Below, one piece after another: positions 723 through 21,692 of a stretch of 24,576 nucleotides of DNA; positions within the stretch are counted from its first letter, which is position 1, and each line of letters starts with the position of its first letter. Source of the stretch: Octopus sinensis (taxonomy: Eukaryota). The DNA lies in contig NW_021836368.1 in assembly GCF_006345805.1 (NCBI RefSeq), positions 1 through 24,576 of the forward strand, written 5' to 3'. The position numbers and the translations under genes are program-made. The notes under the pieces were generated by a model, which saw nothing but the letters and a program-made list of their open reading frames with translations, was not told where the DNA came from and ran no database searches.

Positions 723-1140
723 AGGCGCAGGAGTGGCTGTGTGGTAAGTAGCTTGTTTACCAACCACATGGTTCCGGGTTCAGTTCCCACTGCGTGGCAT
801 CTTGGGCAAGTGTCTTCTGCTATAGTCCAGGGCCGACCAATGCCTTGTGAGTGAATTTGGTAGACGGTAACTGAAAGAAGCCTGTCGTATATATGTATAT
901 ATATATATATGTATTGTTGTGTATGTTTGTGTGTCTGGTTTGTCTCCTAGCATTGCTTGACAACGATGCTGGGTGTTTTTACGTCACCGTCACTTCGCGG
1001 TTCGGCAAAAAAGAGACCGATTAGAATAAGTACTGGGCTTACAAAAGAATAAGTCCCGGGGTCGAGTTTTGTTCGACTAAAGGCGGTGCTCCAGCATGGC
1101 CGCAGTCAGATGACTGAAACAAGTAAAAGAGTAAAAGAGA
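723..1140 (+). mobile_element. tRNA-derived SINE, family A, full-length copy A1
   Basis: Head GGCGCAGGAGTGGCTGTGTGG (A box) and GGTTCAGTTCCC (B box). Body TTGGGCAAGTGTCTTC...GAAAGAAGCCTGTCG, central (TA)/(TG) tract, 3' module ending GGCGGTGCTCCAGCATGGCCGCAGTC...AAGTAAAAGAG. Homologous to several other copies in the window. Confidence 0.9.
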
Positions 1141-2560: not shown

Positions 2561-3211
2561 TATATGTATGTGTGTGTGTACGTACGTACGTACGTGTGCA
2601 TGTATCTATGCGCGAATGTATTGATGCAGCCTGCATGCATGTGCTAGCGTGAGCATGCGTATCTATACACACTTATCTCTGTATAGGTGGCAGCACCAGA
2701 ACAACTCTAGGACTAGATGCTAAATGTTGAGCTTGCATTCTCCTTCCTCAAATCCCTCTTTCGATAAATGAATAAATGAAATATATAAATAAAAATTAAA
2801 AAAATTAAAAAGTAAAAAAACAAACAAAAAAACCAAAAACCAAAAACCGAACTGGCTGCCAACGTTGCCTGTCGATCTCTCCCCCAATTAAGGTATATTC
2901 ATCAGAAGCTGGTCTTCTTTTCACAAAACTATTTCGGTGTACTACTAAATTGTTCCCCAGTAAAAATGTGTCCTGGCCTCCAGCTAAATGTTGTCATCGT
3001 TACTAGAAATAAACCAATACGGATCATTAACGAAACATATTCTATAGAAAACAGTAACTCTCTCTCGCTTTTTCCTTCTTCCTTCTTCTTCTCTCTCCCC
3101 ATTTCTCATTTCCCCGCCCTCTCTATATATCATGTGTGTATGTGTGTGTGTGTGTAAGTGTTTATGTGTATGTCTGTATATATGTGTGTGTGTATGTGTG
3201 TGTTGGTGTAA

Positions 3212-3597
3212 CTTTTATCTTTTATCCTTAACTTGTTTCAGTCATTAGACAGTGGCCATGCTGGGGCACCGTTTTGGAGAATTTTCTAGTCGAATGAATC
3301 GATTACAGGACTTTTTTTTACAGCTTGGTACTTATTCTATCGACTCTTTTGCCGAACCGCTAAGTTACGGTGAGGCAAACACACCGACACCGGTTGTCAA
3401 GCACAGACACAAAGAGATACACACACACAGATGCACACACGGGCTTCCTTCAGTTTCCGTACAAAATTACAAGGCTTTGGTCGGCCTGAGGATATTGTAG
3501 AGGACACTTCATCTTGATGCCATGTAGTAGGACTGAACCCGGAACCATGTGGTTGGGAAGCAAGCTTTATACCATACCACACAGTCACGTCTGCATC
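3212..3597 (-). mobile_element. SINE family A, diverged copy A2
   Basis: Reverse complement of both A modules (CTTGTTTCAGTCATT...GCCATGCTGGGGCACC; GACTGAACCCGGAACCATGTGGTTGG). Confidence 0.85.
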
Positions 3598-4758: not shown

Positions 4759-5202
4759 TATTATATATATAATATTATATATATATATACTAAAAGAAGC
4801 CCGTCGTATATATATATAATATACGACGGGCTTCTTTCAGTTTCCGCCTACCAAATCCACTGTCAAGGCTTTGGTCGGCCCGAGGCTACAGTAGAAGACA
4901 CTTGCCCAAGGTGCCACGCATTGGGACTGAATCCGAACCTGTGTGGTTGAGAAGCAAGCTTCTTACCACACAGCCACTCCTGCAGCTACGTATAAAAGTA
5001 TATACATTATATACTATACCATATCTATATATATATATATATTATATATATATATATATATTATATATTATATATAATATTATATATAGATATATATATA
5101 TAAGATATATATATATATATTATTATGTATATTATATATCTATATATATCTATATATATATATATTATATATATATGTGATATATATATATATATATAAT
5201 AT

Positions 5203-5499: not shown

Positions 5500-5658
5500 A
5501 TAAAGCAGGTAGAATGAGTGTTCTAAAGAATCGGTTGAGTCAAGTAATTCATAAGTCATAAAATAGAAATGTTTCTTTCGCAAAGTAATCAGATGATTCG
5601 TTTAAAATAGATAAAGTTATCGGCAAACGTTGTATCGGTTTGGTATTTGTGTGAGTAC

Positions 5659-5709
<51 letters not shown>

Positions 5710-5716
<7 letters not shown>

Positions 5717-6530
5717 TACATAGGTTTGTATATGTGTGAGTGGGTATATTTTTAAATGTGTATGTGTGATAGTGTGTGTGTACATAGGTTTGTATATGTG
5801 TGAGTGGGCATATGTGTATATGTGTATATGTGTATGTGTGTGTGTACATAGGTTTGTATATGTGTGAGTGGGCATATGTGTTATGTGTATATGTGTATGT
5901 GTGGGTGTACACGGTTTGTATATGTGTGAGTGGCCATGTGGATATGTGTATATGTGTATGTGTGTGGGATACATAGGTTTGTATATGTGTGAGTGGGCAT
6001 ATGTGTATATGTGTATATGTGTATGTGTGTGTGTACATAGGTTTGTATATGTGTGAGTGGGCATATGTGTATATGTGTATATGTGTATGTGTGTGTGTAC
6101 ATAGGTTTGTATATGTGTGAGTGGGCATATGTGTATATGTGTATATGTGTATGTGTGTGTGTACATAGGTTTGTATATGTGTGAGTGGGCATATGTGTAT
6201 ATGTGTATGTGTGATAGTGTGTGTGTGTACATAGGTTTGTATATGTGTGAGTGGGCATATGTGTATATGTGTATGTGTGATAGTGTGTGTGTGTACACAG
6301 GTTTGTATATGTGTGAGTGGGCATATGTGTATATGTGTATGCTTGTGTGATAGTGTGTGTGTACATAGGTTTGTATATTCGTGAGTGGGCGTATGTGTAT
6401 ATGCGTGTGTGATAGTGTGTGTGTGTACATAGGTTTGTATATGTGTGAGTGGGCATATGTGTATATGTGTATGTGTGTGTGTACATAGGTTTGTATATGT
6501 GTGAATGGACATAATTGTATATGTGTATGT
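5710..6530. repeat. Minisatellite, 13 units of ~56-68 bp (mostly 64 bp)
   Basis: Anchor GTACATAGGTTTGTATATGTGTGAGTGGGCATATG recurs at about 5716, 5780, 5844, 5907, 5969, 6033, 6097, 6161, 6227, 6293, 6361, 6425 and 6481. Confidence 0.92.
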
Positions 6531-6779
6531 GTGTGTGTGTGTATGTGTGTATGTGTGTATGTGTGTATGTGTGTATGCGTGGTGGTGTGAAAGAATGAGA
6601 AAGCGTATATATTTGTATGTGTGTTTGTGGCTGTTCAGAAGGAATGTATTTGTGCGTGTGTATACGCATATGAATAGCTACAGAACGTAGGTGACAATGA
6701 GGAAAATAAATACGAGAAAATAAAATATACATATACAAAAAAAAAAAAAATGCCGTGCGGCTGCAAGACAGACGGGTAA

Positions 6780-7075
6780 TGTGTGTATGTATGCATGTAT
6801 GTATGTATGTATGTATGTATGTATGTATGTATGTATGTATGTACGTATGTACGTATGTATGTACGTATGTATGTATGTACGTATGTATGTATGTATGTAT
6901 GTATGTATGTGTGCGTGTGTGTGTGTGCGTATGCATGTATGTATGCATGTATGTATGTATGTATGTATGTATGTATGTATGTATGTATGCATGTATGTAT
7001 GTATGTATGTATGTATGTATGTTGTATGTATGTATGTATGTATGTACGTACGTATGTATGTATGTGTGTGTGTAT
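6780..7075. repeat. (TATG)n microsatellite with TACG/TGCA interruptions
   Basis: Direct reading. Confidence 0.92.
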
Positions 7076-7129
7076 GTATGTAAGTATGAATGTATGTGTG
7101 TATGTATGCATGTGTGTGTGTGTACGTGT

Positions 7130-7298
7130 ATGCCTGTGCTTGTCCTGTGCTTGTCCACCACCGCTATTGGTGTGTTTACGTCCCTGTAACTTAGCGATTC
7201 GGCAAAAGAAACCGAAAGAATAAGTGCCAGGCTTAGAAAAAATAAGTACTTAAAATACTTGAAGCCGGTGGCCCAACATGGTCGCAATCTAATGACTA
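7130..7298 (+). mobile_element. SINE family A, degenerate 3' module
   Basis: TGGTGTGTTTACGTCCCTGTAACTTAGCGATTCGGCAAAAG...CAACATGGTCGCAATCTAATGACT aligns to the A 3' module. Confidence 0.75.
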
Positions 7299-7382
7299 GG
7301 ATGTTTCCCCAAAATGTAGACAGGCTTTAACTGCTGAAATACGTTTTCATTTCCTCTTAGTTTTAACCAGTTGAAAAAGAAA

Positions 7383-8090: not shown

Positions 8091-8192
8091 AATATCTTCT
8101 GTGTTCACAGGAGAATGTAGCCCTTGATACAGTGAACAAATAAATGAATGAATGAATGAATGAATGAATGAATGAATAACATGAGGAGGGAT

Positions 8193-8560
8193 ATGGTTCC
8201 GGGTTCAGTCCCACTGCGTGGCATCTTGGACAAGTGTCTTCTGCTATAGCCCCGAGCCGACCAATGCCTTGTGAGTGGATTTGGTAGACGGAAACTAAAA
8301 GAAGCCTGTCGTATGTATGTATATATATATATATGTATGTGTGTGTGTTTGTGTGTCTGTGTTTGTCCCCCTAGCATTGCTTGACAACCGATACTGGTGT
8401 GTTTACGTCCCCGTCACTTAGCGGTTCGGCAAAAAGAGACCGATAGAATGCGTACTGGGCTTACAAAGAATAAGTCCCGGGGTCGATTTGGTCGACTAAA
8501 GGCGGTGCTCCAGCATGGCCACAGTCAAATGACTGAAACAAGTAAAATAAAAAAAAATAA
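8193..8560 (+). mobile_element. SINE family A, 5'-truncated copy A3
   Basis: Starts at ATGGTTCCGGGTTCAGTCCC (lacks the A box); complete 3' module; preceded by (GAAT)n at 8145-8176. Confidence 0.9.
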
Positions 8561-8795
8561 AAGAAATAGTGAAGATTGTAAGGTTCTCGATCAGGATTGG
8601 TTATGGGAGTTTAAATACCGCCGACTGAGCACGAGACTAGTTTCGTATAAAACTAACCCCTTGAATACATAATGGTAGAACTTATTGTACGGACCGAAGG
8701 GGAAGAACTGACAAAGAGTCGGTCGACTATGGTTGTGTGTGCGCGTGTGTGAGTGCATGTGTATGTGTGTGTGTATGTGTGTGGGTGGTATATGT

Positions 8796-9005
8796 GTTAG
8801 CGCGCCGGCCGAAATGCGTAGCCGTATTTCGTCTGCCGTTACGTTCTGAGTTCAAATTCCGCCGAGGTCGACTTTGCCTTTCATCCTTTCGGGGTCGATC
8901 AAATAAGTACCAGTTACGCACTGGGGTCGATATAATCGACTTATTCCGTTTGTCTGTCCTTGTTCGTCCCCTCTGTGTTTAGCCCCTTGTGGGCAGTAAA
9001 GAAAT
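8796..9005 (+). mobile_element. SINE family B, copy B2
   Basis: CTGAGTTCAAATTCCGCCGAGGTCGACTTTGCCTTTCATCCTTTCGGGGTCGA core; close match to B1 and B3. Confidence 0.92.
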
Positions 9006-9393
9006 GGAAGCACTCCGTCGGTTACGACGATGAGGGTTCCGGTTGATCCGAATCAACGGAACAGCCTGCTCGTGAAATTAACGTGTAAGTGGCTGAGCAC
9101 TCCACAGACACGTGTACCCTTAACGTAGTTCTCGGGGAGATTCAGCGTGACACAGAGAGTGACAAGGCCGGCCCCTTGAAATACAGGTACAACAGAAACA
9201 GGAAGTAAGAGTGAGAGAAAGTTGTGGTGAAAGAGTACAACAGGGATCACCACCACCCCCTGCCGGAGCCTCGTGGAGCTTTTAGGTGTTTTCGCTCAAT
9301 AAACACTCACAACGCCCCCGGTCTGGGAATCGAAACCGCGATCCTACGACCGCGAGTCCGCTGCCCTAACCACTGGGCCATTGTGCCTCCGCG
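9006..9393 (-). mobile_element. tRNA-derived SINE, family D, with 10-bp TSD, nested in the tail of B2
   Basis: Minus-strand head GGAGGCACAATGGCCCAGTGGTTAGGGCAGCGG...GGTTTCGATTCCC (A and B boxes). GTAAAGAAAT occurs at 8996-9005 and 9394-9403. Confidence 0.88.
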
Positions 9394-10683
9394 GTAAAGA
9401 AATAGGTATGTGTGAGTATGCTTGTGCGTGTGTATGTGTGCCTCACCGCTCTCTCAATACTCGCCCCATCGTCTCCACTCACATTCAAACTCTCTCAAAG
9501 CTATATTAAACAATTCCACACGGGATGTGCTTTCCTAGAAACTATGACATTCTGTAAGTTTGTTTCCTTTTTGCTTTTTGTAACTTTTAATGTAGAAAAT
9601 ACACAGAAAACAAAGGAACCGTAACTTACAACATCTCTTAAGCCTACAAACGTCGACTCTCTTTCAAGTGAAACCGTAATAACTCAAAAATGTCTCCTTA
9701 AAATCAGAAGTTATCGAAATATAAAACAGGAAAAATATTCAAAGGGAGAAAAAGTTTATAAAATTTGAAAAAAATAAGAATAAATGAATAAATAAATTTC
9801 ACGTTGAAATCGCAAAATTCTCGTAAAACATCTTCAAATATTGCCATAAAATCGATATTTTATGAAAAAACCCCCATTAAAAATAAAGTAAAAGAAGCTC
9901 ATAAAAGGTCATCTGTGTCGTTAAAACTAACAGATGCTCGTAAAAAGGTAGAAAATATTTAATATTTTAGTTAATATAGGAACATTAGAAAATGCGTGTC
10001 AAACAAAATTATATAATTAATTTTAAATTTACAAAATAACTTGTTCTAATATTCCCAGTGGCAAAAAAAAAAATGAATAAATAAAATAAAATAAACTTCA
10101 ATACAAAAAAAAAGAAAAAAAAACAGAACTCGGAAAACACTGAAAAAATACAAAATAAAACAAGAAACAACGAAGTGAAGCATTTCGCATAATGCTTTTA
10201 AAAAAATTTCTAACAACACATCGCTTTATTCCCACCGTAGTGAAGCATAATAGATGAGGTTTGGTTGTTAGACTCCTATCTAAGCTTCCTTCTATTTTGG
10301 GGGTACGAAAGGCGGAGTGTGAAGTCCCGCGAGACCACTCACAAAGCAATCGGGGTCGATTTTTAAAGTGAATATATCAACTTCTAAATTTGTTTTGAAT
10401 TTAAAACTGTTGAGGGCAATACACTCTGTACAGCATCTGACCGACGTTCTAACGACTCATCCACCCGACCAACTAAAGAGGAAGTAGCTCCAAACAACAT
10501 TATTCCCTCACCGTCTATCTTGGTACCCCACCTGCTACATACCATGCAATGTAGGTACCATGCTATCAAGGTATCGTATGTAACACTACGAAACGAACTG
10601 AAGACATAACGTACTATTCATAAGATTTGATAAATACTTTTAATTAGACACAGACAGACACACGCACACACACACACACACAC

Positions 10684-10717
<34 letters not shown>

Positions 10718-11528
10718 ACACACACACACATTTACACGACGGGTTTGTAACACTTTCCCTCTACCAGATCTTTGTGGTCTTCGTCACTATTTACAATTTT
10801 GTTCCAATTGTTTTCAAATTTTGTATATTGATTAAGTTTTGTATACTAATTATGAAAATGAAATTCATTTCCCCTATAAATCCATAATTAAAAAAGTTAT
10901 TAGGTTTTAAAATTTGCAAAATTTGTTTATTTTAGGAGTATTTTACACATCACAGTGGCGAAAAGCTCTGTTTCCATAGTAACCAAAGATGCTACGCATG
11001 CGCACAAGGAGGAGAAGGAGATACGAAAAAGATAATTGTCTACTATAATAATACTCTTGTGTTTTTCTCCGTCGCAACATATGAATGAGAAAGGAAGGGG
11101 ATGCTAAATGAATAAGGAAGGAAGGGGTGATGTCAAACTAGTAGTGGGAGCGTTCCAATTCTGTGTGAGTATGTGTGTGTGCGTCTTTGTAAAAGGGAAG
11201 TATGTGAATGTTTGTCTGTGTGAAAGCTTTTAAATATCTAATTTGCTCGCGAATGATTTAATGTTAACTTCATTCGTATATATTTTAATGTTATGACTGT
11301 TATTTCTAGCAATGTTTTGACATGCCGATGCCCCTTCCGGCTGATGGTGGAAGAGGCAGCGAATTCGCTATTTTCTGATTGGCTGAAAGTTCTGAGAATT
11401 ATCAGACTTTGAAGACCTGTAACATTTTTGTAAAATTTTTCTGGAATAAATGAAAAACAAGTTCGGATTCAGCGTCAAAAATTACGTTTATGATACATTA
11501 AAAACATTTTTTAAAGATAATTGTAAAC

Positions 11529-11942
11529 AGGCGCAGGCGTGGCTGTGTGGTAAGTAGCTTGTTTACCAACCACATGGTTCCGGGTTCAGTCCCACTGCGT
11601 GGCACCTTGGGCAAGTGTCTTCTACTATAGCCTCGGGCCGACCGAAGCCTTGTGAGTGGATTTGGTAGACGGAAACTGAAAGAAGCCCGTCGTATATATG
11701 TATATATATATGCGTGTGTGTGTTTGTGTATCTGTGTTTGTCCCCCTAGCATTGCTTGACAACCGATGCTGGAGTGTTTATGTCCCCGTTACTTAGCGGT
11801 TCGACAAAAGTGACCGATAGAATAAGTACTGGGCTTACAAAAAGAATAAGTCCGGGGTCGAGTTGCTCGATTAAAGGCGGTGCTCCAGCATGGCCGCAGT
11901 CAAATGACTGAAACAAGTAAAAGAGTAAAAGAGTAAAGAGAG
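11529..11942 (+). mobile_element. SINE family A, full-length copy A4
   Basis: Intact A/B boxes, both modules, and a (GAGTAAAA)n tail. Confidence 0.92.
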
Positions 11943-12092: not shown

Positions 12093-12987
12093 GTGAATCT
12101 TGGGGGTCTCGTCATTTTGAGTTGTCTTTCCTTCTCGTATTGTTGGACTCGTTAAAAAGTTCATGGTTTGTGGTGGGTTTTGTTGTTTATATTAGTACAT
12201 ATATTGATTATCTTCTTTGGTAACATTGTACAAGGATAAAACTTGATTAGGAGTTTCTAATTTTTAGAGGCTCTGGGAAATTTCATTAAAAAACAAATTA
12301 TATATTTTATGGTTCTCTATGAACTTTTAAAAAGACTTTGAATCACCACGGGTACCGCTGGTTTCAACCTGAAAACGGTGGATAATTGGCAGAAGAGTTC
12401 GAACAAAGTATGAAATGATTAACATTATGAGGTTGTCTTGACATAACGAGTTCAAATTCTGGTGGGGTTGACTGTAACTATCCACTAGAAAGAGCAGTCT
12501 TTCAGTCTCAAATCATACCGTTGCGTCTTCCATAAGGAAAAGACATTTGAATATGACACTACATAGTCTTAAAATGACGGGATGATCACATTTGGAATGT
12601 TTTTGATTATATGCTTACTCGACTAGAACTGACTCAGAGCTAAACTCCGCCAGCAATAACAAAAGGAAGAAGTCTCTATGTGGTCATTCGACCTTTAGAA
12701 ATAACGGCCAAATCGTGTTCATATTATATTTTAACTCCTTAAAAAAAGTTACAAGTGTCATTGATGGAACGCTTTTGAACAAATTTCTGATCGATCAAGA
12801 CCGACTCAGGGTTAAACAATAACAGCAGCAGCAGCAGCACCAATATTTCGCACCACATCATAAACTAAATGCTTGGGAAAATCTCGATATCTCAATAATT
12901 GCAGATCAAAGAAATATGATTAAAAAAAAAAAAGAAATTTTAACAAACCACAACTGCTGCTCCTTCTCCTCATCCCCCTTCTCCTCG

Positions 12988-14921: not shown

Positions 14922-16019
14922 TGGTTATGTAGGTTATGTAGGTTTTTGAAGATCATCTTTTATTAATTGTACAAAGACGTTTGTATCCCTGTTTCTGCAG
15001 GACATTAATCTTATAATAATTTTCCCTTTCGTATCTTAATTACAAACTTTTTTTCTTTCAGTTTCCAAACATAGGTATCAAATTTTGTCACGCCTCTGTT
15101 TTTTTTTTGACGTCTTTAAAAGACGTGTATTTATTGAAACTTTATTTGAAGTTTCCTTTAGTCGTGCCGATGTATCTATCATTTGAGTGCCGTGTCTGCG
15201 ATAAACAGTGCTTCATTACAAACATGCTCGGTGGTCTAATCTGACGCTGACTTCCACCATAAAGGCAACAAACTAGTAATTGGCTTGTTAGAAACTAACA
15301 ACATTTTTCTTCACTAAAAAGTATGATGCAAATTGAAAATATATAAAAATATATAAAACGAAAAACGATTATAACAAACACATATAGTCACAAGTATTCA
15401 TAACAACAAGAGCATTAACATGACTCAGTATAGAGCATATAACATGAAATAACAGCAACAACAAATCATGTTGTTACAAACAACAACAACAGCAACAACA
15501 ACAACAACAACACACGATAGAGCATAAAACAACACATGTAATAACTCAATAAAAAACAGTAAGACATGTTGTTACAAATAACAACAACAACAACAACTTA
15601 GTTGTCTGGTCATTAATTTCTGTATTAGTAATTGATGTCCAACGATTAATTATTCTCTCTCTCTCTCTCTGTCTAACTTCTTTCTCTGTCTCCGTCTCTC
15701 TTTCTCGTTTCTCCCCCACTCTCTCTACCCCACCCCACACAGCGGCAGTTTTGATAATTAGAAAATTGGTGAAAATTACTTGATAGTTCTGATTTTCATT
15801 AAACCGTCTGTTGTTTTGATATGGAGCATAGTCCCCCCCCGCCTCTTCTCTGTTCTCTCCACCGCCTTTCTTTCTCTCTCTCTCTCTCGCTACCCTTTCC
15901 AACTTACATACATATATATATATATATATATACATATATAGGCAAATGCAAATATCCAAAGACATAGGTACATACAGGCACATACATGGAGAGATTCTAC
16001 ACGCACACACACACATGTA

Positions 16020-16101
16020 AATCCATGTATTTCTACATACATACATGTATACATACATGTGTGTATTTATATATACATACATACATACAAACATACATAC
16101 A

Positions 16102-16135
<34 letters not shown>

Positions 16136-16202
16136 CATGTAGATGTAGGTACGTACATATATGTTTGTATGTATGCATATATTTTTATTTATCACCTATA
16201 TA

Positions 16203-16266
<64 letters not shown>

Positions 16267-17490
16267 TTGTACGTGTATATGCACAGAGGAATATGCATGC
16301 ATACACATAGTGTATACAAATACATTTACAGTCATATATACACTGACACAGACGTATGCATACAAATACATACACATTATATATGTAAGTATGGATGCGT
16401 GTGTGTCTATGTATGTATATGTATATATCTATATACGTAGTATGTATGTATGGGTATATGTACGCTTGCATGTATGTATGTATGTACGGATGTATGTATG
16501 TATGTATTATGTATGGGTGTATGTACGCTTGTATGTATGTCTGTATGTATGTATGTATGTTATTATGATGTATGTATGTATGTATGTATGCATGTATGTA
16601 TGTATGTATGTATGTATGCATGCATGCATGTATGTATGTATGTATGTATGCATGTATGTATGTATGTATGTATTATGTATGTATGCATGCATGCATGCAT
16701 GTATGTATGTATGTATGTATGGTATGTATGTATGATGCCATGCATGCATGTATGTATGTATGTATGTATTATGTATGTATGTAGTATGTATGTATGTGTA
16801 TGCATGCATGTATGTATGCATGTATGTATGTATGCATGTATGTATGTATATATGTATGTATGTATGTATGTATGCATGATGCATGTATGTATGTATGTAT
16901 GTATGTATGCATGCATGCATGTATGTATGTATGTATGCATGTATGTATGTATGTATGTATGTATGTATGTATGTATGTTGTGTTATGTATGTATGTATGT
17001 ATGTATGTATGTCTGTATGTATGATTATGTATGTGTGTATGTATGTGTGTAATGTGATGTATGTATGTATGTATGTATGTATGTGTGTGTATTTATGTAT
17101 GTATGTATGTGTATGGCATGCATGCATGTATGTATGCATGTATGTATGTATGCATGTATGTATGTATGTATGTATGTATGTATGTATGTATATGCATGCA
17201 TGCATGTATGTATGTATGTATGTATGTATGCATGCATGCATGTATGTATGTATGTATGCATGTATGTATGTATGTATGTATGTATGTATGTATGTTTGTA
17301 TGTATGTATGTATGTATGCATGTATGTATGTATGTATGTATGTATGTATGCATGTATGTATATATGTATGTATGTATCTATGTATGTATGTATGCATGCA
17401 TGTATGTATGTATGTATGTATGTATGTATGTATGTATGTATGTATGTATGTATGTATGTACGCTTGTATGTATGTATGTATGTATGTATG
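16020..17490. repeat. Compound microsatellite: (CATA)n, (TA)n, then ~1.07 kb of (TATG)n with TGCA interruptions
   Basis: CATA array ~16020-16140, TA ~16195-16255, TATG ~16420-17490. Confidence 0.93.
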
Positions 17491-18452
17491 CATGTACATT
17501 CACATGCACACAAGCACTCACATATACACACCCATTCACATTTCTTCACGTGATAATAGTTTGGGAGGTAGTTGTAGTGGTATTGGTTGTACATTTGTAA
17601 TAAGTGGTGGTAAAGTGTTGAGTCTAAAGTTATGGTAATGGTGTTTGTTGCAGGGGTGCTGGCTATAGTGGTGGTGGCGGTAGTGTCTGTACGGTGGTAT
17701 TGGTTACAGTGCTAATGTTTTGCTGTAGTGGTATAGTGTTGGTTGTAGTAGCATTGTTAACATGGTAGTGGCAGTGGTTGTGGTAGTAGTGGTAATATTT
17801 GTGGTTTTTTTGCTGGTGTTGTGGTGGTAGTACTGGTGGTTATAATGGTGTTATTGTGCGTTGTGATTGTAGCAGTCATGGCTGTAGTGGTGGTGGTGGT
17901 GGTGATGAATGATGAGGAAGAGAAAAAGAGAGAAAGGAGGGGAGAAAGAAGGAGAGAGAAAATGAGAAAGAGAGAAAATGAGAGAGAGAGAGAGAAAGAG
18001 GGAGAGAGAGAGAAAGAGAAAGAGAAAGAGAGGGTGTATATAGAATATGGTGAGTGTGTAAGAAAAGCCGATATTTCAAACACTGCAGACGACAATACAG
18101 TTGATGGTTGACAGGGCATTGATTGAAGCGATTGATAGTGGTGGGGGCAGTGTTGATGGAGAGGATGGTGTGCGGGATGGTTCTGATGGTATGTTGGTGA
18201 TGGTGGAATTTACGATACGTTACATGTGTATGCATGCCTTTTGATATATATATATATCTTTATATATATATATATATTATATATATATATATATAATATA
18301 TATTCTATATATATTATATATATATTATATAATATCATACATACATATATACATACATATGTGCGTGTGAGTGCGTGTATATGCGTATGTGTGTGCCTGT
18401 ATAGTTATATATATGTAAATATACATACAGGTATGCTAATATGTTCGTCTGC

Positions 18453-20164: not shown

Positions 20165-20620
20165 GAAACTGAAACTTGTCGAGCGAAGTAAATATCTGTT
20201 GCGTGATGACTGTCTCGGCATTTGGAAGATTTTGTAAGAGAAGAATAGAAACGACCCGATCTGAATGATAATAAGAGGGTAACGGGGCGATGTACTCACT
20301 ATCTGGATAGGCAAAATCTTTCTGCTAGCCTGCACCGAATAATCTGAAACAAATCCATTCAGCTGTCTCAGGGATTGTTTGAGCCGCAAATTCTAGATTT
20401 TTAAAATATTCTTATTTTATAAAAATTATTTTTTACAGCGTAGGAGTGGCTGTGTGGTAAGTAGCTTGTTTACGAACCACATGGTTCCGGGTTCAGTCTC
20501 ACTGCGTGGCACCTTGGGCAAGTGTCTTCTACTATAGCTTCGGGCCTTCCAAACCCTTGTGAGTGGATTTGGTAGAGGGAAACTGAAAGAAGCCCGTCGT
20601 GTATATGTATATATATATAT

Positions 20621-20945
20621 ATTAATAGTTATCGCTATACTAATATGGCAGTCTTATAAATATAAGACTAAAGCTGTCGCTGATTAGCTCCATGAGGCCA
20701 TCGCCTTAAGCTAGCTATTTGACACACAAACTGCGTCCATTATAAACCTTCGAACAAGGGAGGTTAGCCGCTTCATCCTGCCAGTCAGACAGCTACAGAC
20801 GGCGTTTCAGGGTTGTTGCCCCTTATCAATGCAGCGTAGTCTTATATTTATAAGACTGCCATATTAGTATGGCGATAACTATTAATTTCCAGTAACGCTG
20901 CCGTAATCTCTTTTAGAGAGACTTAGTAATTTTAATATTTCTATT
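20621..20945 (-). mobile_element. Inverted-repeat insert carrying a hammerhead motif; probable Penelope-like 3' end or non-autonomous element
   Basis: 50-bp inverted repeats at 20621-20670 and 20837-20886 (1 mismatch), a hammerhead core between them, and a 59-bp asymmetric extension reading IEILKLLSLSKRDYGSVTGN* on the minus strand. Confidence 0.7.
20792..20835 (-). ncRNA. Minimal type I hammerhead ribozyme motif (U3:A8 variant)
   Basis: Minus strand reads GCUGCA UUGAUAA GGGG CAACAA CCCU GAAA C GCC GUC / UGUAGC. Stem I is GCUGCA:UGUAGC, the core is UUGAUAA...GAAA, stem II is GGGG:CCCU, helix III is 2 bp, and the GUC cleavage triplet predicts a cut between 20798 and 20797. Confidence 0.72.
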
Positions 20946-21169
20946 ATATATATATATGTATGTATGTGTGTGTATATGTTTGTGTGTCTGTGTTTGTCCC
21001 CCCAACATCGCTTGACAACCGATGCTGGTGTGTTTACGTCCCCATAACTTATCGGTTCGGCAAAAGAATAAGTCCTGGGGTCGATTTGGTCGACTAAAGG
21101 CGGTGCTCCAGCATGGCCGCAGTCAAATGCTTGAAACAAGTACAAGAGCATTAACAACAATAATAACTC

Positions 21170-21692
21170 TTTCTCTTATAAGCACAAGGCCTGGAATTTT
21201 AGAGGAAGGGATCTCGTTGATTACCCCGTCTCCAGTGCCCAACTAGTGCGTATTTTATTGATTCCGAAAAGCTGAAAGGTAAAGTCGCCCCTGTTGGAAT
21301 TTGAACTCAGAACCCGAAGAGCCAGAAAAATGTCACTATTTTGTCAGCTTACCACCTAAAAGTATTAATCAATAATATTAATGCAATAATAATTATACCA
21401 CGTTAATGATATTTGTACTTTACATCAACAACTATAATAATGGTTTCTAATTATGACACAAGACCAACTATTTTAGGGAGTGCTCCACCGATTCTTTCAT
21501 TTTATCGACCCCGAAAGATGAAAAACAAAGTCGACCTCGGCGGAATTTGAACTCTATACGAAAAAATACTGCTAAGTATGTTGTCTAGTGTGGTAACAAT
21601 TCTGCCTGCTCGCCGCCTTAATAATAATAGTAATAATGATTTCAAATTTTAGTACGAGGCCAGCAATTTACAGGAAGTGGTGAAGTCGATTA
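21170..21692 (-). mobile_element. Head-to-tail cluster of three B' SINE copies/fragments (B core with a different 3' tail)
   Basis: Copies at ~21170-21359, ~21444-21620 and a tail-only piece at ~21638-21692. They share GGAATTTGAACTC / TCGACCCCGAAAG with family B but end in a CACAAGGCC-type tail and (TAA)n. Confidence 0.75.

What the first reader, a model, noticed from the sequence alone, without database searches (positions are those of the whole stretch)
20621..20945. Hammerhead-ribozyme-bearing element bracketed by 50-bp inverted repeats, inserted in a SINE's TA tract
Seen: SINE A6 is split at its central (TA)n by 325 bp. The insert has 50-bp inverted repeats (20621-20670 and 20837-20886, one mismatch). 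A complete minimal hammerhead fold lies directly inside the right repeat on the minus strand, and an asymmetric 59-bp extension encodes ...SLSKRDYGSVTGN*, with the stop falling at the start of the repeat. Established: Penelope-like elements carry minimal type I hammerheads in their pseudo-LTRs and often generate inverted terminal structures. Inference: this is a 5'-truncated PLE 3' end or a small non-autonomous ribozyme retroelement (retrozyme-like) that superficially mimics a MITE and targets TA microsatellites. It would be misannotated as a DNA transposon on the inverted repeats alone.
Basis: partly seen in the sequence, partly recalled or inferred. Interest (0 to 1): 0.85.

Follow-up and report, generated by a model that had tools for sequence, protein, structure and literature searches.

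The report
Hammerhead-ribozyme retroelement stub in a SINE
A 325-bp insert that looks like a small DNA transposon is most likely a truncated, non-coding copy of a ribozyme-carrying retroelement pasted into a TA repeat by Penelope-type machinery; its self-cleaving hammerhead motif belongs to a variant family that the standard RNA database does not detect.

Summary
A tRNA-derived SINE (20440-21160) is split in its (TA)n by about 325 bp. The insert has 50-nt inverted arms (49/50) and a one-sided 59-bp extension. A type I hammerhead fold lies on the minus strand (20842-20787, predicted cut 20798/20797).

The hammerhead is real, although Rfam finds nothing. Its core has the documented U3-A8 covariant of C3-G8. 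An independent element in Octopus bimaculoides (L005) shares the invariant parts: UUGANAA, GAAAC...GUC, loop 2 CAACAA, a 5' UAC bulge and a 3' U bulge. Eleven of 15 base pairs differ by compensatory changes. Rfam misses that copy too.

The layout is (TA)n target, short inverted partial copy, longer direct copy with the ribozyme, and a tail on one side only. This is the published signature of Penelope-like element (PLE) integration. It recurs in L005 and in a mollusc-type PLE locus (L004).

Two points are not: the "...SLSKRDYGSVTGN*" reading frame means nothing, and the ribozyme has the canonical (Schistosoma/retrozyme-like) architecture, not the minimal PLE one. No parent with RT/GIY-YIG genes was found. 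It is a new member of a known kind.

The parts
20440..20620 (+). 5' half of the host tRNA-derived SINE, ending in the left part of its (TA)n tract (about 20599-20620). This is the target site.
   Evidence: BLAST against other SINE copies in the window and alignment with intact copies.
20621..20670 (-). Last 50 nt of the longer 'direct' copy, without tail (left inverted-repeat arm). It contains a 9-bp hairpin, AGUCUUAUA-UU-UAUAAGACU (20669->20650), that ends 29 nt before the copy's end.
   Evidence: A stronger 3'-proximal hairpin sits at the matching place in L005 3245-3275.
20671..20836 (-). Unique 166-nt body of the direct copy. The hammerhead lies at its 5' end.
   Evidence: There is no ORF of note and no protein-database hit for any of the six frames.
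20787..20842 (-). Type I hammerhead domain. Closing stem AGAC (20842-20839) pairs with GUCU (20790-20787). 5' bulge UAC is 20838-20836. Helix I is GCUGCA (20835-20830) with UGUAGC (20797-20792). Core UUGAUAA is 20829-20823 (U3, A8). Helix II is GGGG (20822-20819) with CCCU (20812-20809). Loop 2 CAACAA is 20818-20813. GAAA is 20808-20805. Helix III is A15.1-U16.1 plus C20804-G20800 with loop GCC. C17 is 20798 and the predicted cut is 20798/20797. The 3' bulge U is 20791.
   Evidence: Descriptor scans, folding, alignment and covariation with L005, and covariance model R2.
20837..20886 (+). Short inverted partial copy of the element's 3' region (right inverted-repeat arm). Its sense strand is +, and its inner 6 nt double as part of the hammerhead domain on the minus strand.
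   Evidence: (49/50 complementary to 20621-20670).
20887..20945 (+). One-sided 59-bp 'tail'. It continues the inverted copy beyond the point where the direct copy ends, and it abuts the right part of the (TA)n.
   Evidence: One-sided tails also occur in L005 (2690-2722, 33 nt) and L004 (11772-11845, and about 42 nt at 12578-12619). The PLE tail is described in PMC8557442 and PMC11167929.
20946..21160 (+). 3' half of the host SINE: the rest of (TA)n, a TG-rich tract and the SINE body.

Best explanation
The insert is a dead, non-coding product of one Penelope-like-element (PLE) type retrotransposition into the SINE's (TA)n tract. The template RNA was either the 3' end of an autonomous PLE or a small non-autonomous, retrozyme-like RNA using PLE enzymes in trans. 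It carried a canonical-architecture type I hammerhead with a U3-A8 core, about 130 nt of spacer, a 3'-proximal hairpin and a terminal segment.

The PLE enzyme nicks both strands of an AT-rich target and primes reverse transcription from each. One cDNA started at the distal start site and stopped after about 109 nt: the tail plus the 50-nt arm, now 20837-20945 with sense on the + strand. The other started at the proximal start site, so it has no tail, and ran about 216-222 nt through the hammerhead (20842/20836 -> 20621, sense on the - strand). The two were joined head to head, probably at a 6-nt microhomology, AGACUA.

The 50-bp 'terminal inverted repeats' are therefore a by-product of integration, not transposase binding sites. 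In the parent, the hammerhead presumably cuts multimeric or read-through transcripts after GUC. With a 2-bp helix III it would work best as a dimer of two copies. This solo copy probably has little or no activity.

Shown here: the anatomy, the reality of the ribozyme family, and the recurrence of the layout. Inferred: the enzymology, the microhomology junction, ribozyme activity, and the identity of the parent.
For: Anatomy.

Hammerhead significance: it is the only exact-core hit in the window, against 0.005-0.016 expected per window.

U3-A8 is a documented natural variant that is active in vitro (PMC3088659 section 8). It also occurs in the PLE hammerheads of the Schistosoma Cercyon element (PMC4209133).

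Independent relative: O. bimaculoides CM046614.1 (L005 3086-3155) reads CCUCUCUCAGG UAC AUCUGA UUGACAA GAGU CAACAA ACUC GAAAC AUCGAU GUC UCAGAU U CCUGAGAGAGG. Across the alignment, 97.8% of cells pair, 11 of 15 pairs change on both sides, 0 of 500 shuffles reach this, and slid controls give 0.

The build matches the Schistosoma Sm1-derived N79 hammerhead printed in PMC12550524: UAC 5' of a 6-bp helix I, a 4-bp helix II, and a 6-nt loop 2 of the form CAA..A.

The L005 element has (TA)n 2655-2689, a one-sided tail 2690-2722, inverted arms 2723-2962 and 3056-3293 at 94-95%, each arm carrying the hammerhead on opposite strands, and a 3' hairpin.

L004 holds an RT+GIY-YIG PLE inserted as inverted twins with a one-sided tail next to (TA)n. 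It also holds a mini-insertion with the order tail 42, arm 50, spacer 28, arm 50 inside (TA)n.

Literature: 5' truncation, an adjacent inverted truncated copy, a 30-40 bp tail at one end and a (TA)n bias are described in PMC8557442. Cleavage and extension of both strands, two internal RT start sites with the tail between them, and an AT-rich target are described in PMC11167929. Pairs of hammerheads 100-700 bp apart on opposite strands are noted in PMC4209133.

PLEs live in this genome: a decayed RT/EN copy lies at 24304-22300 on the minus strand.
Against: No parent element with RT/GIY-YIG and a matching 3' end was found. The PLE remnants and full-length PLEs that I could fetch carry no hammerhead of this type (window, L002, L004, L005 at 10 kb, L006, L012, L013).

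Only two independent members of the ribozyme family are in hand.

Rfam hammerhead models score the site below about 7 bits. They miss the L005 copy as well.

The window copy has a G10.1-U11.1 wobble where G-C is highly conserved. Its loop 3 (ACGCCGU) is not a true palindrome.

At 59 nt, the tail is longer than the published 30-40 bp.

Part of the hammerhead domain (AGAC, U, A) lies inside the inverted arm. The twin-copy model explains this only by assuming a microhomology junction.

A single-sequence covariance model built from N79 ranks the site first in the window, but only at 12.8 bits, E=0.17.
Confidence: 0.75

Rival explanations
1. It is a true MITE or foldback DNA transposon: the 266-bp unit 20621-20886, with 50-bp terminal inverted repeats, moved by a DDE transposase (TA or TTAA target). 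It would carry a hammerhead as a passenger or by chance, and the 59 bp would be unrelated sequence that was already in the TA tract.
For: The inverted repeats are 49/50 and flanked by TA/TTAA-compatible bases. The whole unit folds into a long hairpin, -131.6 kcal/mol, z = -10.3. Tc1/mariner, piggyBac and MITE families are listed among recently active octopus elements (PMC13282606).
Against: This needs two events that end at the same base: a 59-bp filler of unknown origin, then a MITE landing at its edge. The same one-sided tail plus inverted arms plus (TA)n recurs in L005. There the 240-nt arms each contain a whole hammerhead on opposite strands, which is duplicated element body rather than transposase-binding termini. 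It recurs again next to a bona fide RT+GIY-YIG PLE in L004. The hammerhead is not a chance motif.
Confidence: 0.08
2. It is a monomer of a metazoan non-LTR retrozyme in the strict sense, copied from a small circular RNA. On this reading the inverted arms are the native rod-like pairing of that RNA, not twin cDNA copies.
For: The ribozyme has the canonical type I build, which PMC7229834 assigns to retrozymes rather than to PLE min-HHRs. The size (about 270-330 nt), the GC content below 50% and the strongly self-paired fold fit. The UAC bulge and closing stem of the ribozyme overlap the arm. A 2026 preprint derives animal retrozymes from PLE pLTRs.
Against: There is no tandem or head-to-tail repeat and no terminal redundancy. 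In L005 the arms duplicate the whole ribozyme in antisense, which makes no sense as a native RNA rod. The one-sided tail is not a described retrozyme feature.
Confidence: 0.12
3. It is not a mobile element. It would be filler DNA captured during repair of a break in the fragile (TA)n tract, for example by snap-back or template switching, with a hammerhead-like string present by accident.
For: Only one copy is visible in the window. No homolog of the non-ribozyme parts was found in any fetched locus. (TA)n tracts are break-prone (general knowledge).
Against: The ribozyme domain belongs to a family with conserved loops and covarying helices. The same composite layout occurs at an unrelated O. 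bimaculoides locus.
Confidence: 0.04

Closest known systems
Penelope-like element (PLE) insertions: 5'-truncated copies with an adjacent inverted truncated copy, a one-sided tail and a hammerhead near the 3' end/pLTR (Evgen'ev & Arkhipova; Craig et al. 2021, PMC8557442; Frangieh et al. 2024, PMC11167929)
   Same: (TA)n/AT-rich target, inverted partial copy, a tail at one end only, heavy 5' truncation, and a hammerhead in the retained 3' region in sense orientation. Live examples of the layout are in L004 and L005.
   Different: There is no RT/GIY-YIG coding sequence and no demonstrated parent. The tail is 59 nt, against the usual 30-40. The ribozyme has the canonical type I build, not the min-HHR typical of metazoan PLEs (long helix II, short helix I, bulged nucleotide after A9).
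Metazoan non-LTR retrozymes (Cervera & de la Pena 2020, PMC7229834), and their proposed origin from PLE pLTRs (bioRxiv 10.64898/2026.07.22.740005)
   Same: A small (150-450 bp), low-GC, non-coding unit with a canonical type I hammerhead: 6-bp helix I, 4-bp helix II, short helix III suited to dimeric action, and loop 1/loop 2 elements.
   Different: It is not in tandem arrays. It is a single unit with an inverted partial copy and a tail. No circular RNA evidence exists. The core is U3-A8.
Schistosoma mansoni Sm-alpha/Sm1 hammerhead (engineered form N79, sequence printed in PMC12550524) and the U3-A8 hammerheads of the Cercyon PLE (PMC4209133)
   Same: Sm1: UAC bulge directly 5' of a 6-bp helix I, a 4-bp helix II, a 6-nt loop 2 of the form CAA..A, GAAAC...GUC, and a closing stem beyond loop 1. 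Cercyon: the U3-A8 core covariation in a PLE-borne hammerhead.
   Different: Sm1 has C3-G8 and loop 2 CAAAUA. The Cercyon motifs are min-HHRs. Here the canonical build and U3-A8 occur together, in a cephalopod.
MITEs (Stowaway/Tc1-mariner-like or piggyBac-like)
   Same: A short non-coding insert with near-perfect 50-bp inverted repeats in a TA-rich site.
   Different: The right arm is 59 bp inside the insert's end. No target-site duplication can be discerned. In the relative, the arms are duplicated element body carrying a ribozyme. No transposase link is known.

Membership tests
Hammerhead ribozyme, type I | Conserved core: C3 U4 G5 A6 N7 G8 A9 / G12 A13 A14 / A15.1-U16.1 / H17 | tested here: met
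   All positions are present, with C3-G8 replaced by the pair U3-A8. This covariant is documented as natural and active in vitro (PMC3088659; PMC4209133). The L005 relative has the same U3-A8.
Hammerhead ribozyme, type I | Three helices around the core, supported by compensatory changes among relatives | tested here: met
   Window versus the two L005 copies: 97.8% of cells paired, 11 of 15 pairs changed on both sides, 0 of 500 shuffles as high, and slid controls 0. Only two independent lineages are available.
Hammerhead ribozyme, type I | G10.1-C11.1 closing pair of helix II | tested here: not met
   The window copy has a G-U wobble (G20822 with U20809). Both L005 copies have G-C. This is a weakening of the copy, not a disqualifier.
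Hammerhead ribozyme, type I | Match to the curated Rfam hammerhead covariance models | tested here: not met
   No hammerhead family is reported at the gathering score or at E<=10, even on 81 nt. The covariation-supported L005 copy is missed too, so the models appear blind to this variant.
Hammerhead ribozyme, type I | Mg2+-dependent self-cleavage after H17 | not testable with these tools
   This needs in vitro transcription of monomer and dimer constructs.
Canonical metazoan type I hammerhead (Sm1/retrozyme type) | Helix I 6 bp and helix II 4 bp, internal loop 1 and loop 2 able to make the tertiary contact, and a short helix III with a palindromic loop for dimer formation | tested here: inconclusive
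   The 6/4 helices, the UAC and U bulges, and the 6-nt loop 2 CAACAA are met and shared with L005. They parallel N79. Loop 3 is palindromic in L005 (ACAUCGAUGU), but in the window copy (ACGCCGU) it is one base short of a palindrome.
Penelope-like element insertion | RT plus GIY-YIG endonuclease ORF | tested here: not met
   The insert is 325 bp with no meaningful ORF. This fits extreme 5' truncation or a non-autonomous template, but membership as an autonomous PLE cannot be claimed.
Penelope-like element insertion | Inverted 5'-truncated partner copy and a tail at one end only | tested here: met
   Arms are 49/50, with a 59-nt extension on one side. The same occurs in L005 and L004. The features are described in PMC8557442 and PMC11167929.
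Penelope-like element insertion | AT-rich or (TA)n target without a discernible target-site duplication | tested here: met
   The insert lies inside the SINE's (TA)n. The L005 and L004 examples are also at (TA)n.
Penelope-like element insertion | Sequence continuity with the 3' end or pLTR of a full-length element | not testable with these tools
   No searchable cephalopod genome was available. About 65 kb of Octopus DNA, 21 kb of Argonauta DNA and 41 kb from bivalve or unidentified hosts were fetched, and none holds a parent.
Non-LTR retrozyme | Head-to-tail tandem copies of a 150-450 bp unit, each with a hammerhead | tested here: not met
   There is a single unit and no direct repeats apart from the palindrome.
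MITE / DNA transposon | Inverted repeats at both termini, flanked by a target-site duplication | tested here: not met
   The right arm ends 59 bp before the insert's end. The target-site duplication cannot be judged inside (TA)n.

The most novel reading that the evidence does not exclude
Octopus genomes may hold a sizeable, so far unannotated family of small non-autonomous elements mobilised by PLE enzymes. These elements would combine the canonical tertiary-stabilised type I hammerhead with a U3-A8 core, home to (TA)n microsatellites, be filed as MITEs or 'unknown' by repeat pipelines, and be invisible to Rfam. One unselected hit in about 65 kb of other Octopus DNA hints at thousands of copies. 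If transcribed, they could yield self-cleaving or circular RNAs, including from introns, as with the L005 copy inside a RING-finger gene model.
Probability: 0.3. Interest if true: 0.6.

Novelty: new member of a known kind. Interest (0 to 1): 0.45.

Why it matters
There are three practical points. First, inverted repeats alone misclassify this class of insert. PLE twin-primed stubs look like MITEs, which inflates DNA-transposon counts and hides retroelement activity in cephalopod genomes. Second, the standard Rfam hammerhead models miss a covariation-supported hammerhead family with a U3-A8 core, so published ribozyme counts for cephalopods are probably underestimates. A small family-specific model (R2 here) finds these copies with scores of 74-86 bits. 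Third, the locus shows in miniature what the in vitro PLE mechanism predicts: both strands primed, two start sites and a one-sided tail. Such loci can be used to map RT start sites and junction microhomology in vivo. None of this changes the known picture of PLE or retrozyme biology.

Tried and rejected
- **Rfam scans** of the window, of 801 nt and of 81 nt gave no hammerhead. I set this aside as a refutation because the validated L005 copy is also missed.
- **A covariance model from the single Schistosoma N79 sequence** ranked the site first, but only at 12.8 bits, E=0.17, with junk hits at 12.4 bits. This is inconclusive.
- **A search with all open stretches of the six frames joined into one query** found nothing, so protein databases cannot collect copies of the insert.
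- **Exact look-ups of window ORFs** found no record.
- **A 20-mer from the arm** hit one metagenome contig. The flanks do not match, so it is a chance hit. Viral and prokaryote collections gave none.
- **The ribozyme pattern** gave 5 hits in prokaryote genomes, close to the number I estimate by chance. The one I inspected does not fold. Viral contigs gave none.
- **The tail 'ORF'** is rejected. It is the end of a spurious ORF that starts in antisense SINE, and under the twin-copy model it lies antisense to the element.
- **Tail-to-tail similarity** between the window and L005 is not significant, p about 0.07. There is no similarity outside the ribozyme and no shared 3' sequence.
- **Looking for the same hammerhead** in the window's own PLE remnant, in octopus PLE remnants and in bivalve full-length PLEs found none.
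- **Pfam** did not recognise the decayed window RT. I identified it through homologs instead.

Full report
**Observation**

The window is cephalopod-like. It holds several copies of one tRNA-derived SINE. It also holds a decayed retroelement whose best protein match is an Octopus bimaculoides locus at 63% identity.

Alignment of SINE 20440-21160 with three intact copies shows it is interrupted inside its central (TA)n by 20621-~20945. The insert has 50-nt inverted arms, 20621-20670 and 20837-20886, complementary at 49 of 50 positions and 166 nt apart. Shuffles give no chance matches to the arm sequence, and there is no second copy in the window. Between the right arm and the resumed (TA)n lie 59 bp with no partner on the left.

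The minus strand reads ...SLSKRDYGSVTGN* across those 59 bp. That is only the tail end of a 92-aa ORF beginning in antisense SINE and microsatellite sequence. It carries no weight.

**Is the hammerhead real?**

On the minus strand, 20842->20787 reads AGAC UAC GCUGCA UUGAUAA GGGG CAACAA CCCU GAAA C GCC G UC|UGUAGC U GUCU. The minimum-free-energy fold gives the closing stem, helix I and helix II.

Rfam reports no hammerhead at its gathering score or at E<=10, even when given only 81 nt. The core differs from the textbook at C3->U and G8->A, two positions that pair with each other. The U3-A8 covariant is documented as natural and active in vitro (PMC3088659). It also occurs in the hammerheads of a Schistosoma PLE (PMC4209133).

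A descriptor that accepts either core finds only this site in the window on both strands. In 30 Mb of Markov-random sequence, motifs with helix I >=6 bp and helix II >=4 bp occur at 0.33 per Mb. That is about 0.016 per window, or about 0.005 if helix III is also compact, and 6e-5 to 2e-4 per insert. If any two core deviations are allowed, the expectation rises to 0.25-0.8 per window. The case therefore rests on U3-A8 being a legitimate variant, and on comparative evidence.

**Comparative evidence**

I could not search a cephalopod genome directly. Fetching the DNA around octopus homologs of the window's RT gave about 65 kb of Octopus sequence.

In O. bimaculoides CM046614.1 (L005), the same descriptor found CCUCUCUCAGG UAC AUCUGA UUGACAA GAGU CAACAA ACUC GAAAC AUCGAU GUC UCAGAU U CCUGAGAGAGG at 3086-3155. 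A slightly decayed copy lies on the opposite strand at 2870-2928.

The two loci share these features:
- the U3-A8 core;
- the UAC bulge directly 5' of a 6-bp helix I;
- the single-U 3' bulge;
- a 4-bp helix II;
- the identical loop 2, CAACAA;
- GAAAC...GUC.

The closing stem, helix I and helix II have different sequences that still pair. Across the alignment, 97.8% of cells pair and 11 of 15 pairs change on both sides. No shuffle out of 500 reaches this, and all slid controls give zero.

The build parallels the Schistosoma Sm1-derived N79 ribozyme printed in PMC12550524: GUAC-AUCCAG-CUGAUGA-GUCC-CAAAUA-GGAC-GAAAC.... This is a genuine hammerhead family of the canonical metazoan type I architecture.

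Rfam misses the L005 copy as well, so its silence here is a false negative. A model built from N79 alone ranks the window site first, but not significantly.

**What the element is**

The L005 element sits at a (TA)n tract (2655-2689). It has a one-sided 33-nt extension (2690-2722) and inverted arms 2723-2962 and 3056-3293 at 94-95%, each carrying the whole ribozyme on opposite strands. A strong hairpin lies about 20 nt from the arm ends. A ribozyme duplicated in antisense is not a designed RNA structure. It means two inverted copies of one template.

A second locus, L004, holds a bona fide PLE (RVT_1 + GIY-YIG) that is 45% identical in RT to the window's remnant. This PLE is inserted as inverted twins (8103-9558 and 9969-11771) with a one-sided ~74-nt tail abutting (TA)n. 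A mini-insertion lies nearby inside (TA)n, with the order tail 42, arm 50, spacer 28, arm 50.

Read on its minus strand, the window insert has the same order: tail 59, arm 50, body 166 beginning with the ribozyme, arm 50.

The literature describes exactly this for PLEs. It reports heavy 5' truncation, an adjacent inverted truncated copy, a 30-40 bp tail at one end and a (TA)n bias (PMC8557442). It also gives a mechanism: the enzyme cleaves and extends both target strands, reverse transcription starts at two internal sites, the tail is the sequence between them, and AT-rich DNA is preferred (PMC11167929). Cervera and de la Pena also noted paired hammerheads 100-700 bp apart on opposite strands.

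**Mechanism proposed**

One retrotransposition event at the SINE's (TA)n produced two cDNAs from an RNA that carried the hammerhead, a spacer, a 3' hairpin and a terminal segment. The short cDNA began at the distal start site and includes the tail (20837-20945, sense +). The long one began at the proximal start site and has no tail (about 20842/20836 to 20621, sense -).

The inner 6 nt of the short copy (AGACUA) also supply the ribozyme's closing stem and two bases of its UAC bulge. I read this as a microhomology junction between the 3' hairpin sequence and the native closing stem. That reading is an inference. The L004 mini-insertion also has its junction in an intrinsic palindrome.

In the parent, the ribozyme would cut after GUC. 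With a 2-bp helix III it would need a second copy to form a dimer. The L005 loop 3 is a perfect palindrome; the window's is one base short of one. This solo copy also has a G10.1-U11.1 wobble and is probably inert.

**Limits**

No parent with RT/GIY-YIG was found. The window's own PLE remnant (24304-22300, minus strand), the octopus remnants and the bivalve full-length PLEs all lack this ribozyme. I therefore cannot say whether the template was an autonomous PLE's 3' end or a small non-autonomous, retrozyme-like RNA.

Outside the ribozyme, the window and L005 elements share no significant sequence. Only two independent family members are known. Activity is untested.

**Rivals**

- A true MITE needs two coincident events. 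It does not explain the recurring one-sided tail or arms that contain whole ribozymes (0.08).
- A strict retrozyme monomer lacks the defining tandem arrangement (0.12).
- Repair filler is contradicted by the family-level conservation and the recurring layout (0.04).

**Verdict**

The ORF is meaningless. The ribozyme is of the canonical rather than the minimal type. The suggested Rfam check would have misled.

This is a new member of a known kind. It has two useful by-products: a U3-A8 hammerhead family that Rfam does not detect, and a clear case of a PLE stub that masquerades as a MITE.

Noticed in passing
window 24304-22300 (minus strand): A decayed Penelope-like element. RT motifs (FYGLPKIHK, RPIV, YLDD, FTME..LPFLD, thumb) are spread over three frames with stops, followed by a possible GIY-YIG remnant near 22470-22380. 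The best hit is O. bimaculoides LOC106870299 at 63% identity. Its homolog family is RVT_1+DUF8422+GIY-YIG+HTH_animal, about 700 aa, and abundant in bivalves. No hammerhead lies at its 3' side.
   Followed up: partly
L005 2655-3293 (O. bimaculoides CM046614.1:27757059-27778414): A twin inverted hammerhead element at a (TA)n tract, with a one-sided 33-nt tail. It lies within the span of a RING-finger gene model (L005 1-8815, +), probably in an intron, with the intact ribozyme in sense orientation. An active ribozyme there would cut the pre-mRNA.
   Followed up: partly
L004 8103-11845 and 12578-12751 (ENA ERZ25072999 contig): A PLE inserted as inverted twins with a one-sided tail next to (TA)n, plus a 170-bp mini twin insertion in the same TA tract. 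Its 3' region has CCUGAUGAUAUCAAUGAAAC: hammerhead core boxes separated by only 7 nt, with a GAUAUC palindrome and no helix II.
   Followed up: partly
window 20787-20842 and L005 3070-3170: Rfam 15 hammerhead models report neither octopus U3-A8 hammerhead, even at E<=10 on about 100 nt. A three-sequence family model scores them at 74-86 bits.
   Followed up: yes
window 729-1131, 3231-3588 (-), 4823-4981 (-), 8193-8547, 11535-11925, 20440-21160: Six copies or fragments of one tRNA-derived SINE with a central (TA)n(TG)n tract. Neither ARAGORN nor the Rfam tRNA model calls their heads. A different tRNA-like repeat appears to lie at about 21170-21390 on the minus strand.
   Followed up: partly
window about 5500-7300 and 15500-17600: Long blocks of TG/TA/CATA-type microsatellite and minisatellite sequence produce dozens of overlapping spurious ORFs of up to 468 aa on both strands.
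   Followed up: no
L013 4001-8809 (ENA ERZ25073814 contig): Two full-length 706-aa PLE ORFs in tail-to-tail orientation, 568 bp apart. This is another inverted PLE arrangement, and no hammerhead was detected by my model or by Rfam.
   Followed up: no
proteins P0067, P0076: PLE RT/GIY-YIG proteins are labelled as coming from 'Candidatus Thiodiazotropha' metagenome-assembled genomes. This is most likely bivalve-host DNA binned into symbiont genomes.
   Followed up: no
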